Positions 13,308 through 64,000 of a stretch of DNA of 64,000 nucleotides are shown here, piece by piece. The DNA comes from Tubulanus polymorphus. Its lineage: Eukaryota > Animalia > Nemertea. Each line of letters starts with the position of its first letter. Positions within the stretch are counted from its first letter, which is position 1. The notes beneath the pieces are model-generated. The model ran no database searches and was not told the origin of the DNA. It saw nothing but the letters and a program-made list of their open reading frames with translations. Location of the stretch: the NCBI RefSeq assembly GCF_964204645.1, contig NC_134036.1, positions 4,804,600 through 4,868,599 of the forward strand, read 5' to 3'. Both the position numbers and the translations under genes were made by a program.

Positions 13308-13406
<99 letters not shown>

Positions 13407-13820: not shown

Positions 13821-16800
13821 ATGTTGTTCGGTATGGAGCAGCGACTGAGAGCGCTGTTAATATCGTCGCTGATCGTCTGTCAAGTTGGCATCGCGCGCGC
13901 TGATCGCGCAGATTCTATCGAGGAATCGTCTGTGACGGTAAGTTCGTCTTGTAACAACACGTGGTACCCGCTAGATTCTACGTCCGGTTACATCGTATCA
14001 CCGAATTACCCTTCGTTAACGCGCGGTGTTGAATGTCGTTGGTTCTTCAACAGCTCTTTACCGGGAACTTTTCACGTCCAAGTTTACCACAACATCGAGC
14101 CGTCAATATTCTGTAGTGATAACTACCTTCTCGTCCACGAGTCTGATGACAGATTGTGCGGTGATGGAAAACATGAAATCCGCCGTAACGATTCGATCTC
14201 GTTGATATTTAGGAGTAACGTCGATGGTGCGCGAGGTAGTCGGGTTTATATCATATATCATTATGAACGAAGTCAAATTAATATTCTTCACGACTGTTCA
14301 AGGTACAATTTAATATTAAAGAGGCTAAAAGCTGAGCGGGGTTATGAATTCGCGATTCAAAAATTACGTAATTGCAAGTTGTTTGTTGAATGGAGCGGGA
14401 TGCCGCGAGGCTATGCGATGAATCTTACATTAATTGATATAGATTTCAAATCCTATCATGTTGGGGAGTCGTTAACGGTGGCCATAAGACTCCACGACGG
14501 ATGGAACACCGGTAGTGATCCTTTCGCTTTTATACCACAACAATCTGGACATCCACCTTCATCATTTTATACTAAAACTAACAAAGCTGTATTCGTTTTA
14601 CGGAAGATACATGTCCAGTTAAAGCTTTTAGTTCAGACGTATAGAATATCGGATTGGAACGTATCTAATCCGTTGATTCAGATCTCTAATAACGAGTCGG
14701 GAGTGCTCATTGCCGATGACAACAGTTTACACGTAATAACTCGATCGAAACACTTACACTGCTGGTCTATCACAGTGCAGGTGTTACAGTACGTCGTCTT
14801 CAACTGGACACGTGATCTCGTCACATCCGGTGACATCATCGGTGTATATAAACTAGAAGGGCTACACGTTGTGAGAACTGATATTTTATTAGGTTACAAC
14901 TACCTGGAATCGCTGAGTGTCAAAACTGACGGCTTTCTCGTCATACTGTGCGTTTTAAAAACAACAGTTCACGATGATGTAAGATTTGAAATAAGCTATA
15001 AATTGGAATCTATTTCGATAGACGATATCAAGGTCAACAACATTCGGGTGAGTATAACCTCTGTAATTATGTTACCCCTTATCGAAATAACATATATTAT
15101 CAAAAATCTGTCTGATAAACTTATTATTGGCGAACTTTAGGTACCCGTGAACCGAATGCGGTTTTTGATGCCATTCTGGCTGTTTCCGAAACAAAAAAAA
15201 GTATCGGTAAATTATCGCATCACTAGATACGAGTTTAAATGGAAAGTAGATATTAATGAAGAGAAAATGGGACTAACGGTTTTATCAGAGAACTGCGAGC
15301 GAGCTGGATTTTACATATTCGACGGTGGTAATTTCACGGCTAGACGATACGGTCCGTATTGTCCTCGTTTATACACCCCGTACGACCGTAACGTCGTCAG
15401 TCTGATTACATCCGGCGGGTCGGTTACTGTAGCAGAATACGCGTATAAGTGGAATGATCAGTTGACCGTCGATAAGGATTCACGCCTCAGATTTCGCCCT
15501 ACCGACTGCGACGGGTACATCCTCCGGGAGGGAGAACAGCGGGTCGATATGACGTCACACTGTCTCGTGATTACACCCGAAAACCGACGCCTTCCTTACA
15601 TCTACATATTATCAGAACACGAATATCAAATTGACCGATGTTTTCAGGGAGCTATACCATTCGGTTCATGTGGAACGTACGTTAGCTTGAGTAGTCAGTT
15701 GCTCAATAACAGTCTCGTATTAAACACTGTGAAAATGCGAGCCACGAGTTTATTCTGGAGGTATTATTTGATGGTTGAACTTCGGAGTAAATGTCAAAAA
15801 TTGAAATCTGCCGTTATAGAAATACTGGATGGGAGCGTATTCGAAGATGAATGCGGGTTGTTGCAATCACCAAATTATCCGGGATCATCTGAGTATCAAC
15901 ATCAACCACTATATTATAACTATCCTCAAGTGGTCAGACGGGGCAAATTTTCCTACCACCGGTTTCTAATCAAATACATAGACAGGGTACTGTGCACGAA
16001 ATCGGGTGTGAGTGACAAAGATCCGATTATCTACAAACAATCGATACATGAATCGCACAGTAGAAAAATCACACATGAGCATAGAATATGTGACAATAAC
16101 GCGATACCGGGACTTGTGTTTTATAGTTTAAGAGATGACAGTGTGTGGTTTGAGGTGAAACGTTATATCGCGACATTTCAAATACAATACACATTAGAAC
16201 AGTCGTTACCGGTAAAACAGTTTGAAAATGTCTGTAAATCAGGATTTCTAGATTCGGGAATTTCCTGCGTTAAATACATCAGAGATAAACGTCTGAATTG
16301 GGAGAAAGCTGAATTGTACTGTAGACAGAAGTACGCGGGACATCTACTCAGTATCAACTCAGAACAGGAAATGATTTCTATCAAACGATTATTCGCAACA
16401 GAACTTCTTCTAAATGCCTATTCACAGAAAGCGCTCATAATGATGATTGGATTAAAAATGAAGGTAAAATTCTTAATTTCTAAATCTATCTCGTTAAAAG
16501 AAATTTATATACCATTATGATGTTTTAATCATGAATTTGCCACTTAAACTTTTAGTCTACTTCTGGTTCTTACACGTGGACTGATGGGAAACCATTGAGC
16601 TACACGGAGTGGTATCAACCTACAAATAACGACACGATACCAGAAGTTATTCAAGGATTGATATCTCCTCTTAGAAAACAACCGATAAATGACGTCAATA
16701 TGCAGTGTACGGCGATGATACTGAATAATCCACGAGGATCAGCGAACTGGGTTCGATTCCCATGTGAAATCGAAGAGGTCCACACGAGTTTCATTTGCGA

Positions 16801-19798
16801 AACTGAAAGAATTGATATCGAAAATAGAACAGCATTAATGTTGAACATAACCAAAAACGACACATTTCTAATACGGGAAAATCCATTTCAAAATATTGAT
16901 TTCAATGAATCGAGCTGTACGTTTGGTTTGGTAACAATAGACAGACAATGCTATCAAATACTGACAGACTGGAACACACATCGAGGTCTTGATATAAAAA
17001 GTGCGACAGAGATGTGTAATGGCGTCCGGGCCGAAGTAGGTAGTATAAACAGTAATAGTGAAAAAGATATCTTAAATTTGATAACAACATTTCAATATCA
17101 ACATCAATATAGCTCTGTACTAACGATGACTTCTTATGACACACTGCAAGTTATAAACCCAATAATCAGCAGAGATGAAATTACTTATATTCAATCAGTT
17201 AAATGGATGATGAAACAGTTTGATAACGCAACAGATACAGCGCATTCTGTTTTGTGTTCATACAATGTAACTGTTGAAGAGTTAGCTTCTATAAGCGGTT
17301 GTAAATCGTGGCAGTTTAAATGTAACGATCAAAGATGTATCAGCGACCATCGCGTATGTGACACCAGACGCGACTGTCGACACGGCGAAGATGAACTGAG
17401 TTGTTCGCATATCAATTTACAAAGTCAGTTTCAATGCGATGATGGTCAGATTATATCAGTAAGTGGTTTCTGCGATTTCATACAGGATTGTGTGGATGGT
17501 TCTGATGAGAAATCTTGTTTTCATCCCCCATGTTTGTCTGAACAATTTCGCTGCAAAAGTGGTCAATGTTTCAGTAGGTCAAACAGATGTGATGGAGTCA
17601 CTGATTGTAAAGACGGATCAGATGAAATGGGATGCACTACTATAATGTGTCAGGGGTTCCTGTGTAACAGTGGAGACTGTATTAGTTCTCAGTTGTATCA
17701 GGATGGTGTCGTGGATTGTAGTGGAAGCCTCGAAGAAGATGAATTAGTAACAACTACTAATGTTTCAGTGAATCCTACTGTTCAGTGCAATAATGAAAAC
17801 TACTGCACAACTAACTTCACAAATCTCTGTACGGAATCAGATGAACAAAGATGTTCTTTCAATTCTCCTCATTGTTATTCAAGACGTCACAGGTGTATTC
17901 TAGAAAGAATGACAAATGGCTTCCCAGTTTGTCGAAATCTTGGGCACGTTTTGAGATGTGAAGAATTTGAATGTCCAGCTGGTACTGCAAAATGTCCAGC
18001 ATCGTACTGTATACCGATCAGACAGGTGTGCGATGGTCAATCAGATTGTCCTAATTCAGAAGATGAACAAAACTGCGAAACATTTTCGTGTCCAGGAATG
18101 TTTAAATGTGGTCAGGAAAATCGATGTATTCCACAATCTGAAGTTTGTGACGGTTTCGTCAATTGTAAACATACAACTGATGACGAGGCTTTCTGTAATG
18201 TCACGTGTCCGATGGGCTGTAGATGTCAAGGTCATTTGATTGATTGTGCCAATGCTGGTTTAAAAGATGTAACTGGTCTTTTCTCGACATCAAGTCGAGT
18301 TTTAATTCTGTCAAATAACAGAATCATTCTGAGCGAGTCGACGTTTGCTTCATTCGTTTATCTTCGAATGCTTAACAGCTCTTCCAATGAATTGTCTTAT
18401 ATTTTACCGAACTCGTTTACAAACCTGCATAATCTACATACATTAGATCTTACATACAACAACTTAACATCATTATCTACAAACACATTCATCGGGTTGT
18501 ATAATTTAAAAGAGTTATTGATAACTGAAAATCCTATACGCCATTTAGACGACAATACCTTTCAAGATTTAATGTCATTACAATTTCTGGACCTTCGAAG
18601 GCTTTCGGTTTTGCTGCTTGGTAGAGATGTATTTAGAGGTTTATCTGCATTACAGTCGTTGAATATCAGCAGCAACAGAATCCATCATATTTCACGATAT
18701 GCTTTTTCAGGATTAAATGAACTTAGAATTCTCGATATTACCAACAACTCTAAATTTATTTTGACAGAAAGAGGCGTTTTCGATAATCTAACATCATTAG
18801 TCTCGTTAACGTCTGATGCTTACAAATTTTGCTGCATGGCTCCGAATGTTGACCAGTGTCTTCCTGAAGCTGATCAATTTTCCTCTTGTTCTGATCTGAT
18901 GGGTAACACAGTCATCATCTGGGTCATCGCTTCATTCAGTTTCTTCGCGAACAGTATCGTCATTTTATTTCGTCTTCGATCAATTCGACTTTCATCCTCC
19001 GAGAAACGTAACACCTCTTCCGATATCTTAATCATTAATATCGCAGCTTGTGATTTTCTCATGTCGATTTATTTGTTTTTGATCGCGGGTGCGGATTACA
19101 TTTATAAAGAAGTTTATTTCCTAAATTCTGAAACTTGGACGGACAGTTCATTATGTAGTTTCGCTGGAGTTACGGTCGCTATTTCTTGTGAAGGCTCGTT
19201 GACGTTTCTATTCATTCTTACACGTCATAGATTCTCGAATATCGTTAACCCATTTTCTGGAAGCCCGATTACATCACCGAGATATGTGTCCTTTATTTGT
19301 GGCGTTTGTTGGGTTACTATAAGTACAATCTCTATAATACCGCTGTCTAAATTATCTTATTTCGGTATTAAATTCTACGGTACTACTGGAGTTTGTTCAC
19401 CTATGAATTTAATATCAATTGATGTCAACGCCTGGCAATATTCATTCGCTATTTTTTCCGTCTTCAACTCTGGTTTACTTGCTGCAATAATGGCGACTTA
19501 TGCGCAAATGTACCGACTCGTATCTGGAAGCAGGTCTGGTTCGGGTAGAATCGACCCTACCGAACTGGTTTTAGCACGTAGGAGTTTGGTGATTAATCTT
19601 TGTAATTTATTTTGCTGGCTGCCGTTAATTATCGTTCAGTTTTGCGCGGTATTACGGGTAGAAATACCGAATCAGGTGGCGGCTTGGCTGGCGGTTCTTT
19701 TCTTACCGATCAACTCGTCCCTCAGTCCCCTTCTTTACACAATACTGACTATCGATATGAAATCCATACGAGCAAAAACTAAACGCTTTCGGCAATAA
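13821..19798 (+). CDS. CUB/C-type-lectin/LDLa/LRR GPCR (GRL101-like LGR) copy 1, ~1930 aa
   Basis: Exons 13821-15047, 15141-16463, 16556-19798; phase-0 GT-AG introns of 93 and 92 nt. Signal peptide; CUB (GYIVSPNYP..ECRW..RLCG); CUB (CGLLQSPNYPG); CTL (LNWEKAELYC..GHLLSI..IGL|..YTWTDG..FICE); ~6 LDLa (e.g. CDGVTDCKDGSDE); LRRNT plus ~7 LRR; hinge YKFCC..FSSCSDLM; 7TM with CWLP. Confidence 0.92.
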
Positions 19799-21253
19799 AT
19801 GTTTCAAACAGTCTTAACGCATTGATCCGGCAAATATAATCGGGTTGTCCTATCTAAGCTCAAGAATTGTTATTTTTAATTGTACGTTCGAGTATTAAAG
19901 TTCACACATTTCACCCAAAATCATGCCCTCTCTGCAAGATGCGTCTGAAAACTATAGAAAATATTGGAATTTTAAACATGATATTAAACCTGAGCGAACG
20001 AAGTTATCAGAATATTTCTGAAATATAATCGGGCGTGGGTATTAACGACACGTGGAAACGATGGAACCGAAAATTACTTTTGAATTGGATAAGAAATGTC
20101 GTGCGAATATCAAATTGTCCAAAATTACCGTGAGATGTTGAACCTGTTATTTTTTATTTTACCTGCTAATTCGGGTTCATGAAAATAAAAGATGAATTGA
20201 CCTCGTAAATACTCGGCGCATCATTAGAGTTGTTAAAATTCTAAGCCGTCATGTTTGAAACATTTAACCGAATCCTTACTTTATATCTAATATAAGATAG
20301 CGAATATTTCGTTTCCTTTTAATCTCAATCGAATGCGAAATTTCGTTTTAAGAAAAAAAAATAATTCTTTTCACAATGCCCGGGGGAGTATAGAATTAAT
20401 TTCTATATCGCAAACAATTTCGTCTTGGATTCATCACTTTGACCGTTCGTACGCGTAACGTAAACATAATAAATAAGTCAAGAGATTTTTGGGCCTTTTC
20501 AATCAGTGTTGTTCATAAGTAACTTACTAAACGGTAAATTTCATTTTCATAGGAAATCGTTTTTTGCCCAGACTCGAGCTATCCACACGCCAGTCATCAA
20601 CTGGTGGATCTGTTTTCCAAAAATGAATAAATGTAAATACAGCCTACAAAGTAGTCTGCAGAACTGAATTGGATTGGAGAATGTTTAAGCAGAAAGTTAC
20701 CAATTATGTTTTTGGTCGAAAGAAAAACCCAGACGAATTTGACATAACATCCAACTATGATATATCCTATCGATTTCCAATGACAAACACGAACCCGCTG
20801 TTTTATTCCCGGTATGTTTGATTTCTTGGTTTTATAACTCATTAATCTAATTAACATTAAACAAACCGATCGAACGAGTAAGAAGGCAATACATATTTCA
20901 AGATCGAAAACTTAAAAACGCGGTTCGCGAATTCGCGAAAACGGCGCCTTACTAACGCGTAAAGTAACGCGCTGCGACTGGATTGAACACACGTCAGTCG
21001 CCGATTTTTAAAACGGTTAGAATCCTGAAACCATGCGATGCGTATAAACTGCGATTCCAATAATATTCATAAAGTCGAATTTTGTCGGAAGGTCGAGCGA
21101 AAATATATATTCGACTAGCTAATGAAATATTAATTTAAAAATAAAATAGGCAAACGAACGACACGGAATAATTGGGATATTTTTATATATAATTGGACAT
21201 GGATATTTACCGCGCCTAAAGGAAATGTGAAACGTGAAAATTGCTGCACAGAT

Positions 21254-21269
21254 TGATGGTAATTACTGG
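21254..21269 (+). promoter_or_regulatory. Invariant upstream motif TGATGGTAATTACTGG (representative copy)
   Basis: Identical at 13407, 13560, 21254, 28903, 36686, 44348, 51820, 59495; exactly 220 nt before the first ATG in copies 2-7; contains the palindrome GTAATTAC. Confidence 0.5.
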
Positions 21270-21473
21270 AGAACTCGTTCGAAAGTAATGTCAACGTTTG
21301 AAAATATATTTATACCCTGAATTTGCTGATTGCAGCAAATGAATTCTAAGAAATCTCAAATGCTCCATCATTAATGGAGAGAACTTGAAGATAGAAAGTA
21401 ATGTGAAAAGGCGATCAGTGATTGAAATAACAACTTTAGAATCTGGAATGAATTTCAACGTTGTGTCGTGTTG

Positions 21474-24400
21474 ATGTTGTTCGGTATGGAGCAGCGACTG
21501 AGAGCGCTGTTTATAGCGTCGCTGATCGTCTGTCGAGTTCGCATCGCACGCGCTGATCGCGCAGACTCTATCGAGGAATCGTCTGTGACGGTAAGTTCGT
21601 CTTGTAACAACACGTGGTACCCGCTAGATTCTACGTCCGGTTACATCGTTTCACCAAATTACCCTTCGTTAACGCGCGGCGTTGAATGTCGTTGGTTCAT
21701 CAACAGTTCTTTTACGGGGACTTTTCACGTCCAAGTTTACTACGATATTGGGCTTTCAATATTCTGTAGTGATAACTACCTTCTTGTTTACGAGTCTGAA
21801 AATAGATTGTGCGGTGTTGGTAAACATGAAATCCGCCGTAACGATTCGATCTCGTTGATGTTTAGGTGTAACGTCGATGGTGCGCGAGGTAGTCCGGTTT
21901 ATGTCATATATAGTTATGAACGAAGCCGATTGAAAATCAGTCACGACTGTTTAAGACACAATATAAGATTGGGGAGGCTAAAAGCTGAGCAGGGTTACAA
22001 ATACACCGTAGGAAAAATAAAGAATTGCCAGTTATTTGTTGAATGGAGCGGCATGCCGCGAGGTTATGCGTTGAATCTAACATTTATTGATACAACTTTT
22101 AGATTCTATTATGGTTGGAAATCATTGTCGGTAACCATGAAAATACACGACGGTTGGAACACCAGCAATGAACCTTTAGCGCATATACCATACCAATCTG
22201 GACATCCAGCATCATCATTTTATACAAAAACAAACAAAGCTGTTTTGGTGTCACTGCTGACACATCTACAGTCACTGCTTTTAGTACAGACGTATAGAAT
22301 ATCTGATTGGAACGTCTCTAATCCGTTGATTCAGGTTTCTAATAACGAGTCGGGAGTGATCGTTCCCGATGACAACAGTTTACACGTAATAACACGATCA
22401 AAACACTTACACTGCTGGTCTATCACAGTGCAGGTGTTACAGTACGTCCTCTTCAACTGGACACGTGATCTCATCACATCCGGTGACGTCATCGGTGTAT
22501 ATAAACAAGAAGGGTTACGCGTTGTAGGAACTGCTATTTCACTCGGTAACAACTACCTGGAATCGCTGAGTGTCAAATCTGAAGGCTTTCTCGTCATACT
22601 GTGCATTTTGAGAGCAGGCGTCCGCAAAAATGCGAGATTTGAAATAAACTATAAGATTGAATCTATTTCGATAGATGATTTAAAGGTCATCGACCGTGAG
22701 GTGAGTATCACCTGTGAAATAATTTTACCTCGTATTGAAATAAACTGAAATTATTAAAAATAAAAACTGTCTGATATACTCGAAATATTGGCTAAATCTA
22801 GGTACCGGTGAACCAGATGTTTTTTAAGACGCCGTTCACGCTGTTTCCAAAACGAATGAAAATCGTTGTGAATTATCGCGTCAGTAGATATGAGTTTAAA
22901 TGGAAAGTGGATATCTATGAAGAAAATATGGAACTAACAGTTTTGTCAGAGAACTGCGAGCGAGCTGGATTTTACATATACGACGGCGGTAATTTCACGG
23001 CTAGACGATACGGTCCGTATTGTCCTCGTTTATGGACATACAACCATAACGTGGTCAGTCTGATTACATCAGGTGGATCGGTTACTGTAGTAGGATACGC
23101 TTATAACTGGGATGATCAGTTAACAGTCGGTAAAATATCATATCTCAGATTTCGTCCTACCGACTGTGACGGGTACGTTTTAAAGGAGGGAGAACGTCAG
23201 ACCAATATGACGTCACACTGTCTCGTGATTACGCCGGAAAATCGACACCTTCCTTTGAGAAATATTAATATATTATCAGAACACGAATATCAAATTGACC
23301 GATGTTTTCAGGAACATCTATCTTTTGGTTCTTGTAGCAGGTATCTGCGATTGAGTAGTCAGGTTCTTAATAACGGCCTCGTTTTAAACACTGTGAAAAC
23401 ACGTGTGACGAATGTATTCTGGTTTTATCCCTTATTAGTTAAACTACGACGTAAATGTCAACGATCGAAGATAGTGGCAGGCGTTATTGGCCAGACACCA
23501 TTGAATGATAATTGCGGAATCATTCAGTCACCAAACTACCCGGGATCAGCAGGGCAAACCAGGGAAACATTAACATATTATTTTCCATCAAAAAAAACTC
23601 GACGAATTCAGTATTACAGATTTGTGATAAAACATTTAGAAAAGATACGATGTGAGAAATCGCATCCTTTAGACAAGGACCCGATTTTAATAAAGCAACC
23701 CATTGCTGATACAACTAGCGATCAAACACATCAACACGAAAATAGAATATGTGACGATAACGCGATACCGGGACTTGTATTCTATAGTTTAAGAGATCAC
23801 AACCTGTGGTTTGAGTTGAAAAATTACATACCTACATTTCAAATACAATACATATTAGAACAGTCGTTGCCGATAAAACAGTTTAAAAATGTCTGTCAAT
23901 CGGGATTTCTAGATTCGGGAATTTCATGCGTAAAACACATCAGTGATAACCGTCTGAATTGGGAGAATGCTGAATTGTATTGTAGACAGAAATACGCGGG
24001 ACATCTACTCAGTATCAACTCACAACAGGAAATGATTAACATTAAAACATTATTCGCTACCGAACTTCTTAAACAGGCATATTCACAGAAAGCGCTCGTA
24101 ATAATGACTGCAATGAAACTACAGGTAAACTTTACCATAAACTCGTAAGAAAGTTTGTATGTAAGATATTGATGTTATTTTTAATCACGTGTTTGCAACT
24201 TAATTTTTCAGCCCGTTTCTGGTTATTACACGTGGACGGATGGTAAACCATTGAGCTACACAGAGTGGTATAAACCTACAAATAACGACACGATACCAGA
24301 AGTTATTCAAGGATTGATATCTCCTCTCAGAAAACAACCGATAAATGACGTCAATATGCCGTGTACGGCGATGATACTGAATAATCCACGAGGATCAGCG

Positions 24401-27400: not shown

Positions 27401-27448
27401 ATCGATATGAAATCCATACGAGCAAAAACAAAACGCTTACGGCAATAA
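21474..27448 (+). CDS. GRL101-like CUB/CTL/LDLa/LRR GPCR copy 2, ~1928 aa
   Basis: Exons 21474-22700, 22802-24124, 24212-27448; introns 101 and 87 nt, phase 0; frame open. Confidence 0.92.
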
Positions 27449-35100: not shown

Positions 35101-35113
35101 ACGCTTACGTTAA
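29123..35113 (+). pseudogene. GRL101-like receptor copy 3, frameshifted in exon 2
   Basis: Exons 29123-30349, 30451-31778, 31865-35113. A CT duplication at 30614-30617 (gagctCTgga vs gagctgga in all other copies) makes exon 2 1328 nt. Exons 1 and 3 are open. A sequencing error cannot be excluded. Confidence 0.8.
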
Positions 35114-50500: not shown

Positions 50501-50555
50501 AATACTGACTATCGATATGAAATCCATACGAGCAAAAACTAAACGCTTACGTTAA
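44568..50555 (+). CDS. GRL101-like CUB/CTL/LDLa/LRR GPCR copy 5, ~1933 aa
   Basis: Exons 44568-45794, 45896-47221, 47307-50555; introns 101 and 85 nt, phase 0; frame open. Confidence 0.92.
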
Positions 50556-52039: not shown

Positions 52040-55000
52040 ATGTTGTTTGGTATGGAGCAGCGACTGGGAGCGCTGTTTATAGCGTCGCTGATCGTCTGTC
52101 AAGTTCGCATCGCGCGCGCTGATCGCGCAGACTCTATCGAGGAATCGTCTGTGACGGTAAGTTCGTCTTGTAACAACACATGGTACCCGCTAGATTCTAC
52201 GTCCGGTTACATCGTTTCACCGAATTACCCGTCGTTAACGCGCGGTGTTGAATGTCGTTGGTTCATCAACAGTTCTTTACCGGGGACTTTTCACGTCCAA
52301 GTTTACCACGATATCGAGCTTTCAATATTCTGTAGTGATAACTACCTTCTCGTCCACGAGTCTGATAACAGATTGTGCGGTGATGGAAAACATGAAATTC
52401 GCCGTAACGATTCGATCTCGTTGATGTTTAGGAGTAACGTCGATGGTGCGCGAGGTAGTCGGGTTTATGTCATATATAGTTATGAACGAAGCCAATTGAA
52501 AATCAGTCACGACTGTTTAAGACACAATATAAGATTGGGGAGGCTAAAAGCTGAGCAGGGTTACAAATACACCATTGGAAAAATACAGAATTGTCAGTTA
52601 TTTGTTGAATGGAGCGGAATGCCGCGAGGTTATGCGTTGAATCTAACATTTATTGATACATCTTTTAAATTCTATTATGGTTGGAAATCATTGTCGGTAA
52701 CCATGAAAATACACGACGGTTGGAACACCAGCAATGAACCTTTAGCGCATATACCACACCAATCTGGACATCCAGCATCATCATTTTATACAAAAACAAA
52801 CAAAGCTGTTTTGGTGTCACTGCTGACACATCTACAGTCATTGCTTTTAGTACAGACGTATAGAATATCAGATTGGAACGTCTCTAATCCGTTGATTCAG
52901 ATCTCTAATAACGAGTCGGGAGTGCTCATTCCCGATGACAACAGTTTACACGTAATATTCCGATCAAAAAACTTACACTGCTGGTCTATCACAGTGCAGG
53001 TGTTACAATACGTCTTCTTCAACTGGACACGCGAACTCGTCATATCCGGTGACGTCATCGGTGTATATAAACTAGAAGGGTTACACGTTGTAGGAACTGA
53101 TATTTTACTCGGTTATAACTACCTAGAATCACTGAGTGTTAAATCTGACGGTTTCCTCGTGATAATGTGCGTTTTGAAAGCAACAGTCCACGAAAATGTG
53201 AGATTTGAAATAAACTATAGAATGGAATCTCTTTCGATATATGATATAAAGGTCATAAACCAGGTAAATATCACCTGTGAAATTTTGTTATCCCGTATCG
53301 ATACGACTTGAAATCATTTAAGATAAAAACTGTCTGATATGCTTGTAATATTGGCCAACTCTAGGTACCGGTGAACCGAATGTGGTTTATGACGCAAGAC
53401 TCGCTGTTTCCAAAACGAAATAAAGTCTCGGTGAATTATCGCGTCACTACATACGAGTTCAAATGGAAAGTTGATATCTATGAAGAGAATATGGAACTAA
53501 CAGTTTTATCAGAGAACTGCGAGCGAGCTGGATTTTACATATTCGACGGTGGTAATTTCACGGCTAGACGATACGGTCCGTATTGTCCTCGTTTATTCAC
53601 CCCGTACGACCGTAACGTCGTCAGTCTGATTACATCAGGTGGATCGGTTACTGTAGTAGGATACGCTTATAACTGGGATGATCAGTTAACAGTCGGTAAG
53701 ATATCATATCTCAGATTTCGTCCTACCGACTGCGACGGGTATGTTTTAAAGGATGGAGAACATCGGATCAATATGACGTCACACTGTCTCGTGATAACAC
53801 CGGAAAATCGACGCCTTCCTTTGAGAAATATTTATATATTATCAGAACACGAATATCAAATTGACCGATGTTTTCAGGATCATCTATCATTCGGTTCTTG
53901 TAGCAGGTATCTGAGATTGAGTAGTCAGGTTCTTAATAACGGTCTCGTATTAAACACTGTGAAAACACGTGTGGCGAATGTATTCTGGTTGTATTCATTA
54001 TTAGTTAAACTACGGCGTAAATGTCAACGATCGAAGATAGTGGCAGGCGTTATTGGCCAGACACCATTGAATGATAATTGCGGAATCATTCAATCACCAA
54101 ACTACCCGGGATCAGCGGGGCAAACCAGAGAAGCATTACTATATAGTTTTCCAAGTAGGAACATTCAGCGAATTCTGTACTACAGATTTGTAATCAAATA
54201 TACTGATATGATACAATGTGAGAAAACGAATCCGTGGGACAAGGACCCGATTGTAATAAACCATTCCATTATTGATAGAACTAGCGGTCAAACACATCAA
54301 CACGAAAATATAATATGCGACAATAACGCGATACCGGGACTTGTGTTTTATAGTTTAAGACATGAGAACCTGTGGTTTGAGGTGAAAAATCACATACCTT
54401 CTTTTCAAATACAATACATATTAGAACAGCCGTTACTGATAAAACAGTTTGAAAATGTCTGTAAATCGGGATTTCTAGATTCGGGAATTTCATGCGTAAA
54501 ATACATCAGAGATGAACGTCTAAATTGGGAGAATGCTGAATTGTATTGTAGACAGAAGTACGCGGGACATCTACTCAGTATCAACTCACAACAGGAGATG
54601 ATTTCTATCAAACGATTATTCGCAACAAAACTTCTTCTAAAGGCATATTCACAGAAAGCGCTCTTAATGATGATTGGATTAAAAATGAAGGTAAAATTCT
54701 TAATTTCTAAAACTATCTCGTTAAAAGAAATTTATATACCATCATGATGTTTTAATCATGAATTTGCCACTTAAACTTTTAGTCTACTTCTGGTTCTTAC
54801 ACATGGACTGATGGGAAACCATTGAGCTACACGGAGTGGTATCAACCTACAAATAACGACACGATACCTGAAGTTATTCGAGGATTGATATCACCTCTAA
54901 GAAAACAACCGATAAATGACGTCAATATGCCGTGTACGGCGATGATACTGAATAATCCACGAGGATCAGCGAACTGGGTTCGATTCCCATGTGAAATCGA

Positions 55001-58000
55001 AGAGGTCCACACGAGTTTCATTTGCGAAACTGAAAGAATTGATATCGAAAATAGAACAGCATTAATGTTGAACATAACCAAAAACGACACATTTCTAATA
55101 CGGGAAAATCCATTTCAAAATATTGATTTCAATGACTCGAGCTGTACGTTTGGTTTGGTAAGAATAGACAGACAATGCTATCAAATACTGACAGACTGGA
55201 ACACACATCGAGGTCTTGATATAAAAAGTGCGACAGAGATGTGTAATGGCGTCCGGGCCGAAGTAGGTAGTACAAACAGTAATACTGAAAAAGATATCTT
55301 AAATTTGATAACAACATTTCAATATCAACATCAATATAGCTCTGTACTAACGATGACTTCTTATGACACACTGCAAGTTATAAACCCAATAATAACCAGA
55401 GATGAAATTACTTATATTCAATCACTAAAATGGACGATGAAACAGTTTGATAACGCGACAGAAATAGCGCATTCTGTTTTGTGTTCATACAATGTAACTG
55501 ATGAAGAGTTAGCTTCTATAAGCGGTTGTAAATCGTGGCAGTTTGAATGTAACGATCAAAGATGTATCAGCGACCATCGCGTATGTGATACCAGACACGA
55601 CTGTCGACACGGCGAAGATGAACTGAGTTGTTCGCATATCAATTTACACAGTCAGTTTCAATGCGATGATGGTCAGGTTATATCAATAAGTGGTTTCTGT
55701 GATTTCATACAGGATTGTGTGGATGGTTCTGATGAGGAATCTTGTTTTCATCTCCCGTGTTTGTCTGAACAATTTCGCTGCAAAAGTGGTCAATGTTTCA
55801 GTAGGTCAAACAGATGTGATGGAGTCACTGATTGTAAAGACGGATCAGATGAAATGGGATGCACTACTAAAATGTGTCAGGGGTTCCTGTGTAACAGTGG
55901 AGACTGTATTAGTTCTCAGTTGTATCAGGATGGAGTCGTGGATTGTAGTGGAAGCCTCGAAGAAGATGAATTAGTAACGGCGACTAATGTTATAGTGAAT
56001 CCTACTGTTCAGTGCAATAATGAAAACTACTGCACAACTAACTTCACAAATCTCTGTACGGAATCAGATGAACAAAGGTGTTCTTTCGATTCTCCTCATT
56101 GTTATTCAAGACGTCACAGATGTATTCTAGAAAGAATGACAAATGGCTTCCCAGTTTGTCGAAATCTTGAGCACGTTTTGAGATGTGAAGAATTTGAATG
56201 TCCAGCAGGTACTGTAAAATGTCCAGCATCGTACTGTATACCGATCAGACAGGTGTGCGATGGTCAATCAGATTGTCCTAATTCAGAAGATGAGCAAAAC
56301 TGCGAGACATTTTCTTGTCCAGGAATGTTTAAATGTGGTCAGGAAAATCGGTGTATTCCACAATCTGAAGTTTGTGACGGTTTCGTCAACTGTAAACATA
56401 CAAAAGATGACGAGGCTTTCTGTAATGTCACGTGTAAGAAGGGCTGTAGATGTCAAGGTCATTTGATTGATTGTGCGAATGCTCGTTTAAAAGATGTAAC
56501 TGGTCTTTTCTCGACATCAAGTCGAGTTTTAATTCTGTCGAATAACAGAATTATTCTGAGCGAGTCGACGTTTTCATTATTCGTTTATCTTCGAATGCTT
56601 AACATCTCTTCCAATGAATTGTCTCATATTTTACCGAACTCGTTCACAAACCTGCATAATTTACATACATTAGATCTTACATACAACAACATAACATCAT
56701 TATCCACAAACACATTCATCGGTTTGTATAATTTAAAAGAGTTATTGATAACTGAAAATCCTATACGCCATTTAGACGACAATACCTTCCAAGATTTAAT
56801 GTCATTACAAATTCTGAACCTTCAAGGGCTTTCAGTTTTGCTGCTTGGTAGAGATGTATTTAGAGGTTTATCTGCATTGCAGTCGTTGGATATTAGCAGT
56901 AACAGAATCCATCATATTTCACGATATGCTTTTTCAGGATTAAATGAACTTAGAATTCTCGATATCACCAATAACTCTAAATTTATTTTGACTGAGACAG
57001 GCGTTTTCGATAATCTAACATCATTAGTCTCGTTAACGTCTGATGCTTACAAATTTTGTTGCATGGCATCGAATGTTGACCAGTGTCTTCCTGAAGCTGA
57101 TGAATTTTCCTCCTGTTCTGATCTGATGGGTAACACAATCCTCAGAGCTATCATCTGGATCATTGCTTCATTTAGTTTCTTCGCGAACAGTATCGTCATT
57201 TTATTTCGTCTTCGATCAAATCGACTTTCATCCTCCGAGAAACGTAACACATCTTCTGATATCTTAATCATCAATATCGCAGCTTGTGATTTTCTCATGT
57301 CGATTTATTTGTTTTCGATCGCGGGTGCAGATTATATTTATAAAGGAGATTATTTCCTAAATTCTGAAACTTGGACGGATAGTTCATTGTGTAGTTTCGC
57401 CGGAGTCACGGTGACTATTTCTTGTGAAGGCTCATTGACGTTTCTATTTATTCTAACACGGCAGAGATTCTCGAATATCGTTAATCCATTTTCTGGAAGC
57501 CCGATTACATCACCGAGATATGTGTGCATTATTTGTGGCATGTGTTGGGTTACTATAAGTACAATCTCTATAATACCGCTGTCACAATTATCTTATTTCG
57601 GTATTAAATTCTACGGTACTACTGGAGTTTGTTTACCTATGAATCTAATATCAATTGATGTCAATGCCTGGCAATATTCATTCGCTATTTTTGCGGTATT
57701 CAACTCGTTCATACTCGCTACGATAATGGCGACTTATGCGCAAATGTACAGACTCGTATCTGGAAGCAGGTCTGGTTCAGGTAGAATCGATCCTACCGAA
57801 CTGATTTTAGCACGTAGAAGTTTAGTGATAAATCTTTGTAATTTATTTTGCTGGCTGCCGTTAATTATCGTTCAGTTTTGCGCGGTATTTCGGGTAGAAA
57901 TACCGAATCAGGTGGCGGCTTGGCTGGCGGTTCTTTTCTTACCGATCAACTCGTCCCTCAATCTCCTTCTTTACACAATACTGACTATCGATATGAAATC

Positions 58001-58034
58001 AATACGAGCAAAAACTAAACGCTTTCGGCAATAA
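52040..58034 (+). CDS. GRL101-like CUB/CTL/LDLa/LRR GPCR copy 6, ~1933 aa
   Basis: Exons 52040-53263, 53365-54690, 54783-58034; introns 101 and 92 nt, phase 0; frame open; TM7 NPxxY changed to NLLLY. Confidence 0.9.
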
Positions 58035-59714
58035 ATGTTTTAAACAGTCTAAACGCATTGATCCAGCTAATTAATCGGGTTGTCCTATTTAACCTCAAGA
58101 ATTGGTTTGTTTGAATTACTCCATCAAATTCTAATAGAGACTGAAAAGATACAAATTTCATCCTAAATCACCGCCCTCTCAAGACGTGGCTAAAAATTAT
58201 AGAAAACATTGGGACTTTCAATTAAGTATTGATTTCTTAAAAACCTGAGCGAAAGAAGTTATCAGAACGTTTCTGAAATATTATTGGGCGTGGGTATTCA
58301 CGACACGTAGAAATGATTGAACCGAAAATTATTTTTTTTTAAATTGGTTGAATAAGGCGTGAATATAAGGTTGTCCGAAATATTTGTGAAACGTTGGACC
58401 AGTTATTTTTTTATCTTTCCTGCTAATTCAGGTTCATAAAAAATGAAAAATGAATTGACCTCGCAAATTCTCAGTGCTTCATTCGTTGTTAGAATTCTAA
58501 GCCGTCACGTTTGAAACATTAAGCCAAATCTTTATTTTATTTTCCTAATATAAGATAGCGAATATTTTGTTTTCTTAACCCTCAATCGAATGCGGAATTT
58601 TCTTTGAAAATAATTCTTTTCACGATGGGGGAGTATAGAATAGATTTTATATCGCAAACACTTTCGTTTTGGATTCATCACTTCGACGGTACGAGTAACG
58701 TTAAGATAATAAATAGGTCAAGAGATTTTAAGGCGATTTTCTACCAGTGTTGTTTATAATCAACTTAACGCTAAATTTCATTTTTATTGGATATAGATTT
58801 TTGCCCAGACTCGAGCTACCCACTCGACAGTCATCAACTTGTAGATCTATTTCCAAATATGAATAAATGTAAATACAGCCTACGAAGTATTATACAGAAC
58901 TGTATTAGATTGGAGAATGTTTACGCTGAAAGTTACCAATTACGTGATTGGTCTATAGAAAAACCCAGACGAATTTGACATAACATCCAACTTTGATATA
59001 TCCTATAGATTTCCGATTACAAACACGAGCCCGCTGTTTTATTCTCGGTATGTTTGATTTGTTGGTTGTATAACACATTAATCTAATCAGCCTAACATTA
59101 AACTAACCGATTGAGCGAATAAGAAGGGCAATACATATTTCAAGATCGAAAACTTCAAAACGCGGTTCGTGAATTCGCGAAAACGGCGCCTTAGTAACGC
59201 GTAAAGTAACGCGCTACGACTGGTTTGAACTCACGCCAGTCACCGATTTTCAAAATTGTCAAAATCCTAAAACCGTGCGATGCGTGTGAACTTCAATTCC
59301 AATAATATTCATGAAGTCGAATTTTGTCGGAAGGTCGAGCGAAAATATATATTCGACAAGCTAATGAAATATTAATTTAAATATAGAATACGTAAACGAA
59401 CGACCAGAAATAATTGGAACATTTTTATGTACAATTGGACATGAATATTTACCGGGCCTAATGGAAACGTGAAACTGAAAATTGCTGCACAGATTGATGG
59501 TAATTACTGGAGAACTCGTTCGAAAGTAATGTCAACGTTTGAAAATACATTTGTATCCTGAATTTGCTGATTGCAGCAAATGAATACTAAGAAATCTCAA
59601 ATGCTCCATCATTTATGGAGAAAATTTGAAGATAGAAAGTAATGCGAAAAGGCGATCCGTAATTGAAATAACAACTTTTGAATCAGGAATGAATTCCAAC
59701 GTTGTGTCGTGTTG

Positions 59715-62700
59715 ATGTTGTTCGGTATGGAGCAGCGACTGAGGGCGCTTTTAATATTGTCGCTGATCGTCTGTCAAGTTCGCATCGCGCGCGCTGATCG
59801 CGCAGACTCTATCGAGGAATCGTCTGTGACGGTAAGTTCGTCTTGTAACAACACGTGGTACCCGCTAGATTCTACGTCCGGTTACATCGTTTCACCGAAT
59901 TACCCTTCGTTAACGCGCGGTGTTGAATGTCGTTGGTTCATCAACGGTTCTTTACCGGGAACTATTCGGGTCCAAATTTACTACGATATCGAGCCGTCAA
60001 TATTCTGTAGTGATAACTACCTTCTCGTCTACGAGTCTAATAACAGATTCTGCGGCGATGGAAAACATGAAATTCGCCAAAACAATTCGATCTCGTTGAT
60101 GTTTAGGAGTAACGTCGATGGTGCGCGAGGTAGTCGGGTATACATCATATATCGTTATAAACGAAATCATTTGTTAATTAGTCACGATTGCCCCAAATAT
60201 CTCCGATTGAAAGAAATACAAACATCAATAGGATACAGATATCAGATAAGCTACTTACTAACGTGCAAATTGTTTTTGGAATGGATCGGGATGCCGGATG
60301 ATTTTGGCATGAACCTGACCTTAAGAAAGCTAAGTTTGAAAGTAAGCCCAGGCGCTGATCCAGCGACGACTGTTAAAATCCACGACGGATGGAACACCAG
60401 CAGTGAACCTATAGGTCTTATACGAGAACAAACCGGGCATCCACCGTCATCATTTTATACTAAAACAAGCCAAGCCGTCATATCACTGCTATATCCTCGA
60501 CTGTTTTTTGAAACACAGCTTCTAATTCAAATGTACGAAATATCGGATTGGAACGTCTCTAATCCGTTGATTCGCATCTCTAATAACGAGTCGGGAGTGC
60601 TTATTCCCGATGAAAACAGTTTACACGTAATAACTCGATCGAAACACTTACACTGCTGGTCTATCACAGTGCAGGTGTTACAGTACGTCGTCTTCAACTG
60701 GACACGTGATCTCGTCACAACCGGTGACGTCAAAAGTGTATATAAACTAGAAGGGTTACGCGTTGTAGGAACTGATATTTTACTCGGTTACAACTACCTA
60801 AAATCACTGAGTGTCAAATCTGACGGATTTCTCGTCATACTGTGGGTTCTGAAAGCAACCGTTCACGACAATGCGAGATTTGAAATAAACTATAAAATTG
60901 AATCTATTTCGATAGGTGATGTTAAGGTCAACAACCGTCAGGTGAGTAACAACTGTGAAATTATGTTACTCTGTGTCAGAAATTTATGTCAACTTGATCT
61001 GTCTGATATGCTTAATATTGGAAACCCTAGGTCACTGTGAACCGAATGTGGTCAATGAAAACAAACTCGCTGTTTCCAAAACGAAATAAAGCCTCGGTGA
61101 ATTATCGCTTCACTAGATACGAGTTTAAATGGAAAATTGATATTCATGACGAAAAAATGGAACTAACAGTTTTATCAGAGAACTGCGAGCGAGCTGGATT
61201 TTACATATTCGACGGTGGTAATTTCACGGCTAGACGATACGGTCCGTATTGTCCTCGTTTATACGCCCCGTACGACCGTAACGTGGTCAGTCTGATTACA
61301 TGAGGTGGATCGGTTACTGTTGTAGGATACGCTTATAATTGGGACGGTCAGTTGACAGTCGATAAGGAATCATATCTCAGATTTCGTCATACCGACTGTG
61401 ACGGGTATGTTTTAAAGGAGGGAGAACGTCAGATCAATATGACATCACACTGTCTCGTGATTACACCCGAAAACCGACGCCTTCCTCTAAGAAATATTCA
61501 CATTTTATCAGAACACGAATATCAAATTGACCGATGTTTTCAGGATTCTCTCTTATTCGGTTCTTGTAGCAGGTATCTGACATTGAGCAGTCAGTATCTC
61601 AATAACAGTCTAGTAATAAACACCGTTAAAACACAATTCATGGTTCCATTCTGGTATAATCCTTTATTGGTGAAACTACGTCGTAAATGTCAACGATCCA
61701 AGAAAGTTGACGTATATGGTATCAACCAGGCACCACTGAATGATAATTGCGGAATCATTCAGTCACCAAACTACCCTGGATCAGCAGGGTACACCAGGGA
61801 AGCATTAATATATAGTTTTCAATCGAGCATCACTCGACGAATTCAGTACTACAGATTTGTGATAAAACATATTGAAATGATACGATGTGAGAAATCACAC
61901 CCGCGAGCCAAGGACCTGATTCTAATAAAACAATCCATTACTGATACAACTAGCGGCCAAACACATCAACGCGAAAATAGAATATGTGACAATAACGCGT
62001 TACCAGGACTTGTGTTTTATAGTTTAAGACATGAGAACCTCAGGTTTGAGGTGAAATATTACATACCGACATTTCAAATACAATACACATTAGAACAGTC
62101 GATACGGGTAAAACAGTTTAAAAATGTCTGTAAATCAGGATTTTTAGATTCGGGAATTTCATGCGTAAAATACATCAGAGATGAACGTCTGAATTGGGAG
62201 AATGCTGAATTGTACTGTAGACAGAAGTACGCGGGACATCTACTCAGTATCAACTCACAACAGGAAATGATTTCTATTAAAAGATTATTCGCTACAAAGC
62301 TTCTTCTAAAGGCATATTCACAGATAGCGCTCATAATGATGATTGGATTAAAACGGCAAGTAAGTCATGAAATAAGTCATTAGAAAGTTTGTATATAAGA
62401 ATTTGATGTTATGTTTAATCACGTGTTTGCAACTTAATTTTTCAGCCCGTTTCTGGTTATTACACTTGGACTGATGGAAAACCATTGAGCTACACAGAGT
62501 GGTATAAACCTACAAACAACGACACGATACCAGACGTTATTCAAGGATTGATATCTCCTCTTAGAAAACAACCGATAAATGACGTCAATATGCCGTGTAC
62601 GGCGATGATACTGAATAATCCACGAGGATCAGCGAACTGGGTTCGATTCCCCTGCGAAATCGAAGAGGTTCATACGAGTTTCATTTGCGAAACTGAAAGA

Positions 62701-64000
62701 ATTTTTATCGAAAATAGAACAGCAACAAAGTGGAATGTAACCAAAAACGACACATTTCTGATACGGGAAAATGCATTTCAAGATATTAAATTCAATGAAT
62801 CGAGCTGTACGATTGGTTTAATAAGCATAGACAGACAATGCTATCTCTTACTAACGGACTGGAACACACATCGAGGTCTTGATATAAAAACTGCGACAGA
62901 GATGTGTAATGGCGTCCGGGCCGAAGTAGGTAGTATTAAAATTAATATTCAAAAAGATATCTTAAATTTGATAACAGCATTTCAATATGAACATCAATAT
63001 AGCTCTATACTAACGATAAGGTCTAATGACAGACTGCAAGTTATAAACCCAATAATCACCAGAGATGAAATTACTTATATTCAATCAGTTAAATGGATGA
63101 TGAAACATTTTGATAATGCGACAGATACAGCGCATTCTGTTTTGTGTTCATACAATGTAACTGATGAAGAGTTAACTTCTATAAGCGGTTGTAAATCGTG
63201 GCAGTTTAAATGTAACGATCAAAGATGTATCAGCGACCATCGCGTATGTGATACCAGACACGACTGCCAACACGGTGGAGATGAACTCAATTGTACGGAT
63301 ATAAATTTCCACAGTCAGTTTCAATGCTATGATGGTCAAGTGATATCAATAAGTGGTTTCTGTGATTTCATACAAGATTGTGCGGATGGTTCTGATGAGG
63401 AATCTTGTATTCATCCCCCGTGTTTGTCAGAACAATTTCGCTGCACAAGTGGTCAATGTTTCAGTAGGTCAAACAGATGTGATGGAGTCACTGATTGTAA
63501 AGACGGATCAGATGAAATGGGATGCACTACTGAAATGTGTCAGGGGTTCCTGTGTAACAGTGGAGACTGTATTAGTTCTCAGTTATATCAGGATGGTGTC
63601 GTGGATTGTAGTGGAAGCCTCGAAGAAGATGAATTAGTAACAACTACTAATGTTACAGTGAATCCTACTGTTCAGTGCAATGATGAAAACTACTGCACGA
63701 CTAACTTCACCAATCTCTGTACGGAATCAGATGAACAAAGGTGTTCTTTCAATTCTCCTCACTGTTATTCAAGACGTCACAGATGTATTCTAGAAAGAAT
63801 GACAAATGGTTCCCCAGTTTGTAGAAATCTCGAGCACGTATTGAGATGTGAAGAATTTGATTGTCCAGCTGGTACTGTAAAATGTCCAGCATCGTACTGT
63901 ATACCGATCAGACAGGTGTGCGATGGTCAATCAGATTGTCCTTATTCAGAAGATGAACAAAACTGCGAGACATTTTCATGTCCAGGAATGTTTAAATGTG
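59715..64000 (+). pseudogene. GRL101-like receptor copy 7, nonsense codon in exon 2, 3' end outside the window
   Basis: Exons 59715-60941, 61031-62359, 62446->64000; introns 89 and 86 nt. TGA at 61301-61303 where other copies have Ser (TCA/TCC/TCG) in LI(T/S)SGG. Confidence 0.8.

What the first reader, a model, noticed from the sequence alone, without database searches (positions are those of the whole stretch)
13821..64000. Copies are patchwork mosaics: ectodomain segments shuffled between paralogs
Seen: the closest relative of a copy changes along the unit. Exon-1 middle groups {2,3,5,6} (LKISHDCLRHN), {4,7} (ISHDCPK.LRL) and {1}. Exon-1 end groups {2,3,5} (QEGLRVVGTAISLGNN) against the rest. 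The exon-2 CUB groups {2,5} (ETLTYYFPSK) and {3,4} (YSFLHKNFQRIRYY). Intron 2 plus the start of exon 3 groups {1,6}. LDLa1-2 groups {3,5,7} (QHGGDELNCTDINFH..QCYDG). LRRNT groups {1,2,3} (CPMGC) against {4,5,6} (C[K/E]KGC). The 3' flank groups {1,2}, {3,4}, {5,6}. No single duplication tree fits this. Inference: recurrent segmental gene conversion or unequal crossover builds new domain combinations, as in other diversified invertebrate receptor loci.
Basis: partly seen in the sequence, partly recalled or inferred. Interest (0 to 1): 0.85.

Follow-up and report, generated by a model that had tools for sequence, protein, structure and literature searches.

The report
Mosaic paralogs in a receptor array
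Seven (in the whole array, seventeen) tandem copies of a giant CUB/lectin/LDLa/LRR G-protein-coupled receptor gene in a ribbon-worm genome are real patchworks of one another, made by ordinary gene conversion and unequal crossing-over between neighbouring copies, a well-known process seen here in a new gene family.

Summary
Window 13813-64000 holds 7 of the 17 tandem units (about 7.65 kb each) of one array. Each unit is a 3-exon gene of about 1,930 aa for a GRL101-type (type C2) LGR receptor.

every motif grouping was found exactly as stated.
- **Nearest relative:** it switches many times along each unit.
- **Statistics:** PHI z = -49 for 7 units and -102 for 17, with 0/1000 permutations as low. 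Conflicting 1-kb trees have 98-100% bootstrap. AU tests reject almost every cross-segment tree and the whole-unit tree.
- **Silent sites:** the signal holds on non-coding sites alone and on third codon positions alone, so it is DNA exchange, not convergence.
- **Tracts:** 330 bounded high-identity tracts, median 0.4 kb and up to 3-5 kb, diverged 0.2-8%.
- **Mechanism:** recurrent gene conversion plus occasional whole-unit duplication.
- **Cassettes:** hypervariable CUB-like cassettes travel as blocks. Their types are older than the array and are shared with copies at other loci. The LDLa-LRR-7TM backbone is array-specific.
- **Selection:** dN/dS is below 1 everywhere.
- **Not done:** no long reads were available, so single-molecule confirmation is missing.

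The mechanism is classical and the instance is new. The scan noted sister arrays of this family elsewhere in this genome.

The parts
13813..21465 (+). Unit U01. Exons 13821-15047, 15141-16463, 16556-19798. All frames open. First unit of the array.
21466..29114 (+). Unit U02, the reference gene model. Exons 21474-22700, 22802-24124, 24212-27448. Both introns are GT..AG and phase 0, about 90 bp. 1,928 codons.
   Evidence: Pfam hits CUB (weak), Lectin_C (weak), Ldl_recept_a x4, LRR_8, 7tm_1
29115..36897 (+). Unit U03. Exons 29123-30349, 30451-31778, 31865-35113. A 2-bp insertion in exon 2 shifts the frame, with the first stop at 30715, so this is a likely pseudogene.
36898..44559 (+). Unit U04. 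Exons 36906-38132, 38234-39568, 39655-42894. Frames open. Its 5' cassettes are the most distinctive in the window.
44560..52031 (+). Unit U05. Exons 44568-45794, 45896-47221, 47307-50555. Frames open.
52032..59706 (+). Unit U06. Exons 52040-53263, 53365-54690, 54783-58034. Frames open.
59707..64000 (+). Unit U07, cut by the window end (the full unit runs to 67344 in extended coordinates). Exon 1 is 59715-60941. Exon 2 is 61031-62359 with a premature stop at 61301. Exon 3 starts at 62446.
52774..55955 (+). Recent conversion-like tract in U06. It is 3.2 kb and 99.7% identical to U10 and U11, which lie 4-5 units away outside the window. It is bounded on both sides by diverged sequence. It spans the end of exon 1, exon 2, intron 2 and the start of exon 3.
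31061..32847 (+). 1.8-kb tract in U03 with 6 mismatches to U08, five units away.
47592..48234 (+). 643-bp tract in U05, 99.8% identical to U07 62731-63373 (the LDLa region). Flanks are about 5% diverged.
17989..18858 (+). 870-bp tract in U01 (LRRNT/LRR region) with 5 mismatches to U09, eight units away.
20818..23033 (+). 2.2-kb tract running from the U01 spacer into U02 exon 1-2. It is 98.6% identical to the U07 spacer into U08, an offset of exactly 6 units. It crosses the gene border.
21866..22266 (+). Hypervariable cassette H1 in U02. The same columns are 14213-14613, 29515-29915, 37298-37689, 44960-45360, 52432-52832 and 60107-60498 in the other units. It covers exon-1 codons about 131-264 and has a CUB-like beta-sandwich fold. 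There are 5 discrete types, up to 39% apart.
23252..23787 (+). Hypervariable cassette H3 in U02 (exon 2, second CUB-like region). The same columns are 15594-16126, 30906-31441, 38684-39231, 46349-46884, 53818-54353 and 61484-62022. There are 11 types at the 5% level, up to 36% apart.

Best explanation
The window holds the first 7 of 17 head-to-tail copies of a 3-exon gene of about 1,930 aa. The protein is a GRL101-type (type C2) leucine-rich-repeat GPCR with a long CUB-like / C-type-lectin-like / LDLa ectodomain. The genome is that of a nemertean, Tubulanus polymorphus or a close relative.

The copies are true mosaics. Homologous recombination between misaligned copies has repeatedly copied stretches of about 0.2-5 kb from one unit into another, which is interparalog gene conversion. 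Now and then it has duplicated a whole period, which is unequal crossing-over.

The exchange is blind to gene structure. Tracts start and end in exons, introns and spacer, and some cross the border between genes. The well-conserved DNA (92-97% identical) supplies the homology. The strongly diverged CUB-like cassettes lie between conserved stretches and are carried across as whole blocks, so cassette types are re-dealt among backbones.

Shown: the mosaic, its statistics, the bounded tracts, their range of ages, the block behaviour of the cassettes, and the greater age of cassette types than of the array backbone. Inferred: the recombination mechanism itself, and any benefit of the new combinations.
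For: Array structure and gene model. Family.

Mosaicism:
- The nearest neighbour changes along every unit, for example U01 is closest to U14, then U09, then U15, then U10.
- PHI z = -49 for 7 units and -102 for 17 units, 0/1000 permutations.
- Segment trees conflict with 98-100% bootstrap. AU tests reject the trees of other segments, except between the two exon-1 segments, and the whole-unit tree in 7 of 8 segments.
- PHI is still z = -31 on non-coding sites and -42 on third positions.

Tracts:
- 330 permutation-significant tracts occur in 129 of 136 pairs, median 423 bp.
- Divergence inside tracts is 0.5-8% against about 8% in the flanks. 110 tracts are clear two-sided patches, with no dependence on distance within the array.
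- Tracts cross unit borders.
- dS varies from 0.02 to 0.76 along one gene.

Cassettes and backbone:
- Cassettes are coherent blocks, with discordance peaks in the conserved DNA between them.
- In cassettes H1 and H3 the array is not monophyletic against copies from other loci (constraint costs 199 and 235 lnL units, AU p = 2e-4 and 1e-6). In LDLa and LRR-7TM only the edge unit U17 groups outside.

Generality: a second array of the family shows the same pattern, PHI z = -39.
Against: - No long read could be laid on the junctions. The runs found were 100-300 bp unitigs and one Illumina run from another sample, so assembly errors at the youngest tracts (99.7% identical) are not excluded directly.
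- GC3 is not raised in the homogenised parts, so the usual mark of biased gene conversion is absent.
- Gene conversion and repeated unequal crossing-over cannot be fully separated from one static assembly.
- No expression data were found.
Confidence: 0.85

Rival explanations
1. Assembly artefact. The assembler joined reads of different paralogs or haplotypes, so the switch points are chimeric joins rather than biology.
For: Only short unitigs and short reads were available. The youngest tracts (U06 against U10/U11, 3.2 kb at 99.7%) are the kind of repeat that can mislead an assembler.
Against: - A chimera would give about 100% identity to the true source on each side. Most shared tracts are instead 1-8% diverged (median 3%), so they are old.
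- Hundreds of switch points occur in all 17 units and also in a second array.
- 14 of 17 copies keep three open exons and intact splice sites.
- All 30 bins of a 6-kb test stretch were covered in runs X1, X3 and X5 (27 of 30 in X2), and no aberrant joints were reported.
- Units differ about every 10 bases, which long accurate reads resolve easily (inference).
Confidence: 0.04
2. Unequal crossing-over and birth-and-death alone, without gene conversion. Each mosaic unit is a hybrid left by successive unequal exchanges that also changed copy number.
For: One-period-long near-identical blocks with an offset exist. Examples are U09 tail + U10 head against U10 tail + U11 head, and V3/V4/V5 in the second array. 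U14 looks like a U01-type 5' half joined to a U12-type 3' half.
Against: 110 tracts are short patches with diverged sequence on both sides, and they link units up to 16 positions apart with no distance effect. Each would need two closely spaced crossovers plus loss of the units between them.
Confidence: 0.08
3. One duplication tree with no exchange. The shifting similarities come from uneven rates or from convergent selection on the ectodomain.
For: Divergence is very uneven along the unit, and the ectodomain is less constrained than the 7TM part.
Against: Rate variation cannot change which copy is closest. The whole-unit tree is rejected by 7 of 8 segments. The signal is as strong at non-coding and third-codon sites.
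Confidence: 0.01
4. A programmed or somatic diversification system, in which cassettes are copied into an expressed gene in the way of lamprey VLRs or the somatic variation proposed for snail FREPs.
For: Discrete cassette types are flanked by conserved DNA. An independent individual shows low read depth over one cassette region, about 2x where roughly 7x per copy is expected.
Against: Every unit is a complete gene with its own signal peptide, splice sites and 7TM, not a donor cassette. Tracts also cover spacer DNA and cross gene borders. The tracts span a wide range of ages, as expected of germline evolution. No soma-versus-germline data exist here.
Confidence: 0.02

Closest known systems
Regional gene conversion in clustered protocadherin genes of vertebrates (fugu, zebrafish, human; PMC1852091, which cites Noonan et al. 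2004)
   Same: Both are tandem arrays of receptor paralogs in which repeated conversion homogenises the membrane-proximal part while the distal ectodomain stays diverse. In both, different parts of a gene give different trees, and silent sites are homogenised too.
   Different: Here each unit is a full GPCR gene, not a variable exon spliced to shared constant exons. GC3 is not raised in the homogenised parts, whereas it is in fugu. Diverged cassettes are themselves moved between backbones.
Cluster of GRL101-like GPCRs (C-type lectin + LDLa + LRR + 7TM) in the SudRes2 schistosome-resistance region of Biomphalaria sudanica (PMC12297450)
   Same: It is the same receptor type with a lectin-bearing ectodomain. 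It also forms a dense cluster of mutually paralogous genes in a structurally hyperdiverse region, with gene presence/absence differences between haplotypes.
   Different: The snail cluster has 12 genes in 440 kb, not 17 in 130 kb. No CUB-like modules are reported there. Mosaicism or gene conversion is not described in the passages read, and no paper in the library combines GRL101 with gene conversion.
GRL101 of Lymnaea stagnalis and the type C2 LGR clade (PMC11863921)
   Same: LDLa repeats, a leucine-rich-repeat region and a rhodopsin-type 7TM in one chain. It is an orphan receptor class found across bilaterians.
   Different: The nemertean genes carry about 850 extra N-terminal residues (CUB-like and lectin-like modules, exons 1-2). 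They are multiplied to well over a hundred copies in the genome.
Chimeric paralogs in plant NLR resistance-gene clusters, primate KIR and MHC genes (from my own knowledge, not checked here)
   Same: Frequent sequence exchange between tandem paralogs gives patchwork genes. Old sequence types persist and are recombined.
   Different: In those families positive selection on the recognition surface is documented. Here dN/dS is below 1 in every 40-codon window, and no ligand or function is known.

Membership tests
GRL101-type (type C2) LGR GPCR | LDL-receptor class A repeats in the ectodomain | tested here: met
   Ldl_recept_a, 4 stretches, E = 2e-33;
GRL101-type (type C2) LGR GPCR | Leucine-rich-repeat region followed by a rhodopsin-type 7TM domain | tested here: met
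   LRR_8 E = 1e-29 and 7tm_1 E = 3e-21 in exon 3
GRL101-type (type C2) LGR GPCR | Closest named relatives are GRL101-type rather than relaxin (C1), glycoprotein-hormone (A) or bursicon (B) receptors | tested here: inconclusive
   The best named hits are 'GRL101-like' proteins of molluscs, crustaceans and a tardigrade, with a few 'relaxin receptor-like' further down. No phylogeny of LGR types was built.
Interparalog gene conversion / concerted evolution in a tandem array | Different segments of the repeat support different, well-supported trees | tested here: met
   Bootstrap 98-100 for conflicting clades. AU rejection, except between the two exon-1 segments.
Interparalog gene conversion / concerted evolution in a tandem array | Compatible sites are clustered along the sequence (PHI), also at silent and non-coding sites | tested here: met
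   z = -49 and -102; z = -31 non-coding and -42 third positions
Interparalog gene conversion / concerted evolution in a tandem array | Bounded tracts of raised identity between otherwise diverged copies | tested here: met
   330 significant tracts, of which 110 are two-sided patches
Interparalog gene conversion / concerted evolution in a tandem array | Raised GC3 in converted regions (GC-biased conversion) | tested here: not met
   Spearman rho = 0.26, p = 0.24, between third-position divergence and GC3. This mark is common but not obligatory.
Interparalog gene conversion / concerted evolution in a tandem array | Junctions present on single DNA molecules | tested here: inconclusive
   Only short unitigs and 150-nt reads were available. 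All bins were covered in three of the four runs and no joints were reported, but nothing spans a tract.
Somatic cassette-assembly receptors (VLR-like) | An incomplete germline gene plus flanking donor cassettes | tested here: not met
   All 17 units are complete genes and 14 have fully open frames
Receptors under diversifying (positive) selection | dN/dS above 1 in the recognition region | tested here: not met
   dN/dS is 0.03-0.97 in 40-codon windows, and 0.28-0.59 in the cassettes. High dN there comes with high dS. Site-level tests were not run.

The most novel reading that the evidence does not exclude
The CUB-like and lectin-like cassettes may be a set of ancient, discrete module types. 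They would be kept by balancing selection and continually re-dealt by conversion among well over a hundred GRL101-type GPCR genes in several arrays. That would give the worm a germline-encoded combinatorial repertoire of recognition receptors, immune or chemosensory, that signal directly through a G protein.
Probability: 0.3. Interest if true: 0.7.

Novelty: new member of a known kind. Interest (0 to 1): 0.45.

Why it matters
GRL101-type receptors are orphans. A lectin-bearing cluster of them has just been linked to parasite resistance in snails (PMC12297450).

A nemertean genome with very many such genes is a tractable candidate for studying how an invertebrate builds receptor diversity without somatic rearrangement. 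The genes sit in arrays whose backbones are homogenised while old ectodomain cassettes are reshuffled.

There is also a practical consequence. Whole-gene trees of this family are meaningless, so orthology, dating and selection tests must be done segment by segment.

Tried and rejected
- **Reads.** One run search and one read-laying run gave only Logan unitigs of 100-300 bp and Illumina reads of another sample. No record spans a tract, so the junction test is undecided.
- **Structure of exon 1.** A prediction from the 7 paralogs had mean pLDDT 45. Only residues about 150-280 are usable. They match CUB domains at Z 7.3-7.8, which is in the 'middling' range, so the CUB-like call is tentative. Exon 2 was not folded.
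- **Pfam on pieces of exons 1-2.** Only sub-threshold CUB and Lectin_C hits came back.
- **GC-biased conversion.** No signal.
- **Tract ends at introns or domain borders.** No enrichment. There are 3-8 distinct ends per 250 columns everywhere.
- **Exchange favouring near neighbours.** No distance effect.
- **Literature.** No paper combines GRL101 with gene conversion. The one paper that holds both 'Nemertea' and 'GRL101' (PMC11863921) does not treat this family in nemerteans.
- **Hudson-Kaplan Rmin** (160 and 317) is inflated by recurrent mutation at about 10% divergence, so it is not used as an event count.
- **Joined protein.** The spliced protein was never assembled or searched. Exons were searched one by one by reference. 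For that reason full-length annotated relatives (about 1,930 aa) were outside the length range.
Full report
**What is there.**
A self-comparison of the window shows a head-to-tail repeat of about 7.65 kb from 13808 to the window end. A search of the whole genome and the DNA fetched beyond the window show that the array has 17 units. It covers C12:4,818,412-4,948,455, which is window 13813 to 143856 in extended coordinates.

Each unit carries three long open frames that form one gene. In unit 2 the exons are 21474-22700, 22802-24124 and 24212-27448. Both introns are GT..AG, phase 0 and about 90 bp, giving 1,928 codons.

- Exon 3 holds four LDLa repeats, a leucine-rich-repeat region and a rhodopsin-type 7TM domain.
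- Exons 1-2 give only weak CUB and C-type-lectin hits.
- The one confidently folded part of exon 1 (residues about 150-280) resembles CUB domains at Z 7.3-7.8.

The best named relatives are 'GRL101-like' receptors. The closest is a protein of the nemertean Tubulanus polymorphus. That protein matches other loci of this genome at 92-99%, so the genome is that species or a near relative (inference).

The family is very large here. There are at least 40 full-length relatives of exon 3, and more than 180 matches to a shorter paralogue, many of them in a region of C9.

Fourteen of the 17 units have all three exons open. U03 has a 2-bp insertion in exon 2. U07 has a stop at 61301. U14 has a stop in exon 3.

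**Check of the observation.**
The {1,6} grouping around intron 2 is also seen. The 3' flank pairs are only partly as stated.

A sliding-window comparison shows that every unit changes its closest relative many times. U01 is closest to U14 over columns 200-3700 at 95-99%. It is then closest to U09 at 99%, then U15, then U10. U06 is 99.7% identical to U10 and U11 over 3.2 kb (window 52774-55955) and unrelated to them on either side.

**Is it more than chance?**
- The pairwise homoplasy index is far below its permutation mean. It is z = -49 for the 7 window units and z = -102 for all 17, with 0 of 1000 permutations as low.
- Maximum-likelihood trees of eight 1-kb segments conflict with bootstrap 98-100.
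- AU tests reject the trees of the other segments, mostly at p < 0.005. The exception is the two exon-1 segments, which accept each other's trees. Seven of the eight segments reject the whole-unit tree at p < 0.05.
- A GENECONV-style scan finds 330 tracts that exceed all 300 permutations of their pair, in 129 of 136 pairs. The median length is 423 bp and the 5-95% range is 166-1334 bp.
- Within the window, 52 such tracts occur in 20 of 21 pairs.

**Exchange, not convergence.**
PHI stays extreme on introns plus spacer alone (z = -31.5) and on third codon positions alone (z = -41.6). Tracts run across the border between genes. Window 20818-23033 matches the U07/U08 border at an offset of exactly six units.

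Synonymous divergence ranges from 0.02 to 0.76 along one gene. A single duplication history cannot give that range.

**Conversion and crossing-over.**
Of 280 internal tracts, 110 are clear patches whose two flanks are more than twice as diverged as the tract. The number of tracts per pair does not fall with distance in the array. Both points favour non-reciprocal conversion.

There are also near-identical blocks about one period long and offset by one unit. Examples are U09 tail + U10 head against U10 tail + U11 head and V3/V4/V5 in a second array. These are the footprint of unequal crossing-over or tandem duplication.

Divergence inside tracts runs from 0.2% to 8%, so the process is old and probably still going on.

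**Cassettes and backbone.**
Divergence is concentrated in a few segments:
- exon-1 codons about 131-264 (H1);
- the end of exon 1;
- exon-2 codons about 181-320 (H3);
- the area around intron 2;
- the start of exon 3.

These segments fall into discrete types, 5 for H1 and 11 for H3 at the 5% level. The types are combined in many ways.

Left/right discordance was compared with a random-halves control for noise. Discordance is almost nil inside H1 and parts of H3. It peaks in the conserved DNA between cassettes, at columns about 900-1100, 1500-1600, 2300-2600, 2900-3100, 3400-3700 and 5900-6000. Introns are not hot spots, and tract ends are spread evenly.

Six copies from other places were then added: an inverted array just upstream, an array at 4.16 Mb, and copies on C8, C10 and C11.
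- In H1 and H3 the 17 units are not monophyletic. Forcing monophyly costs 199 and 235 log-likelihood units (AU p = 2e-4 and 1e-6).
- In the LDLa and LRR-7TM parts only the 3' half of the last unit, U17, groups with outside copies.
- The H1 cassette of U04 is 92% identical to a fragment on C10, but only about 85% identical to any copy in its own array.

So the cassette types are older than the array, or they move between loci. The backbone is homogenised within the array, and the edge unit escapes that homogenisation. This is the classical picture of partial concerted evolution.

**Selection.**
dN/dS is below 1 in every 40-codon window. It is 0.28-0.59 in the cassettes and 0.06-0.3 in the 7TM part. 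High dN in the cassettes comes with high dS. The cassettes are therefore old and less constrained, not demonstrably under positive selection.

**Assembly question.**
The only runs that hold the stretch are kept as short unitigs. The one raw-read run is Illumina data from another sample. All 30 bins of window 52032-58031 are covered in three of the four runs, and no joints were reported. Nothing spans a tract.

Four indirect points argue against chimeras:
- most tracts are 1-8% diverged from their partner;
- switch points occur in every unit and also in a second array;
- reading frames and splice sites are kept;
- units differ about every ten bases.

In the independent sample the depth over the U06 exon-2 cassette is only about 2x, where about 7x per copy is expected. 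This hints at differences between individuals but was not followed up.

**Comparison with what is known.**
Type C2 LGRs (GRL101-type) are orphan receptors of bilaterians (PMC11863921). A cluster of lectin-LDLa-LRR-GPCR genes lies in a hyperdiverse resistance region of Biomphalaria (PMC12297450).

Regional gene conversion that homogenises the membrane-proximal part of tandem receptor paralogs and spares the distal ectodomain is well described for clustered protocadherins (PMC1852091).

No paper in the library links GRL101-type genes with gene conversion. The one paper that holds both 'Nemertea' and 'GRL101' does not describe this family in nemerteans.

The spliced protein was never joined or searched, and exons were handled one by one by reference. 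First-stage notes of this scan list sister arrays of the same family elsewhere in this genome.

**Verdict.**
The mechanism is ordinary. The instance and the trans-locus cassette types are new and moderately interesting.

Noticed in passing
window 263-1441 (+), 9360-10361 (+), 3456-4067 (-): Upstream of the array lie two intronless rhodopsin-type GPCR frames (7tm_1, E = 8e-8 and 1e-13). A Tctex-1 family dynein light chain frame lies on the minus strand.
   Followed up: no
window 13311-13405: A perfect (AT)47 microsatellite lies about 400 bp before the first unit of the array.
   Followed up: no
window 30451-31778 (U03 exon 2); window 61301 (U07); extended coordinate 118594 (U14, outside the window): Three of the 17 copies are broken: a 2-bp insertion, a premature stop and a premature stop. 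All three still take part in shared tracts.
   Followed up: partly
G000:C9 about 2.2-5.0 Mb, and C22: Dozens of copies of a shorter paralogue, with open frames of about 1,100 aa, lie here. They are 82-92% identical to the T. polymorphus protein P0001. P0001 itself matches one place at 99% in its first part and only 92% in the second part.
   Followed up: no
G000:C8:1211728, 2352578, 3165890, 3563164 (minus strand): Four dispersed copies on another chromosome are each about 91% identical to this array's exon 3, with almost equal scores. In H1 and H3 the C8 copy branches as a separate lineage beside the U01/U14 type.
   Followed up: partly
L020 (G000:C10:3846360-3849647): A truncated copy covers only unit positions 866-4160. 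Its H1 cassette is 92% identical to that of U04, closer than any copy in U04's own array.
   Followed up: partly
L026-L030 (G000:C12:4130343-4171500): A second array has 5 units of 7.9-8.4 kb. V4 is at least 99.5% identical to V5 over its first 1.7 kb, and to V3 over the rest. This is a very recent one-period duplication. PHI z = -39.
   Followed up: yes
window 53632-54831: In the Illumina run of another sample (X5) the depth at 98% likeness is about 2x. Three near-identical copies should give about 20x. 29% of the laid reads run on into unlike sequence. This may mean presence/absence or type differences between individuals.
   Followed up: no
extended coordinates about 140600-143856 (U17, outside the window): The 3' half of the last unit is under 90% identical to every other unit and groups with copies outside the array. 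This is the edge effect expected of arrays homogenised by exchange.
   Followed up: partly
window 25104-25388 and the same place in each unit: A conserved 94-aa open frame in another reading frame lies inside exon 3 of every unit. It is probably a by-product of the coding frame.
   Followed up: no
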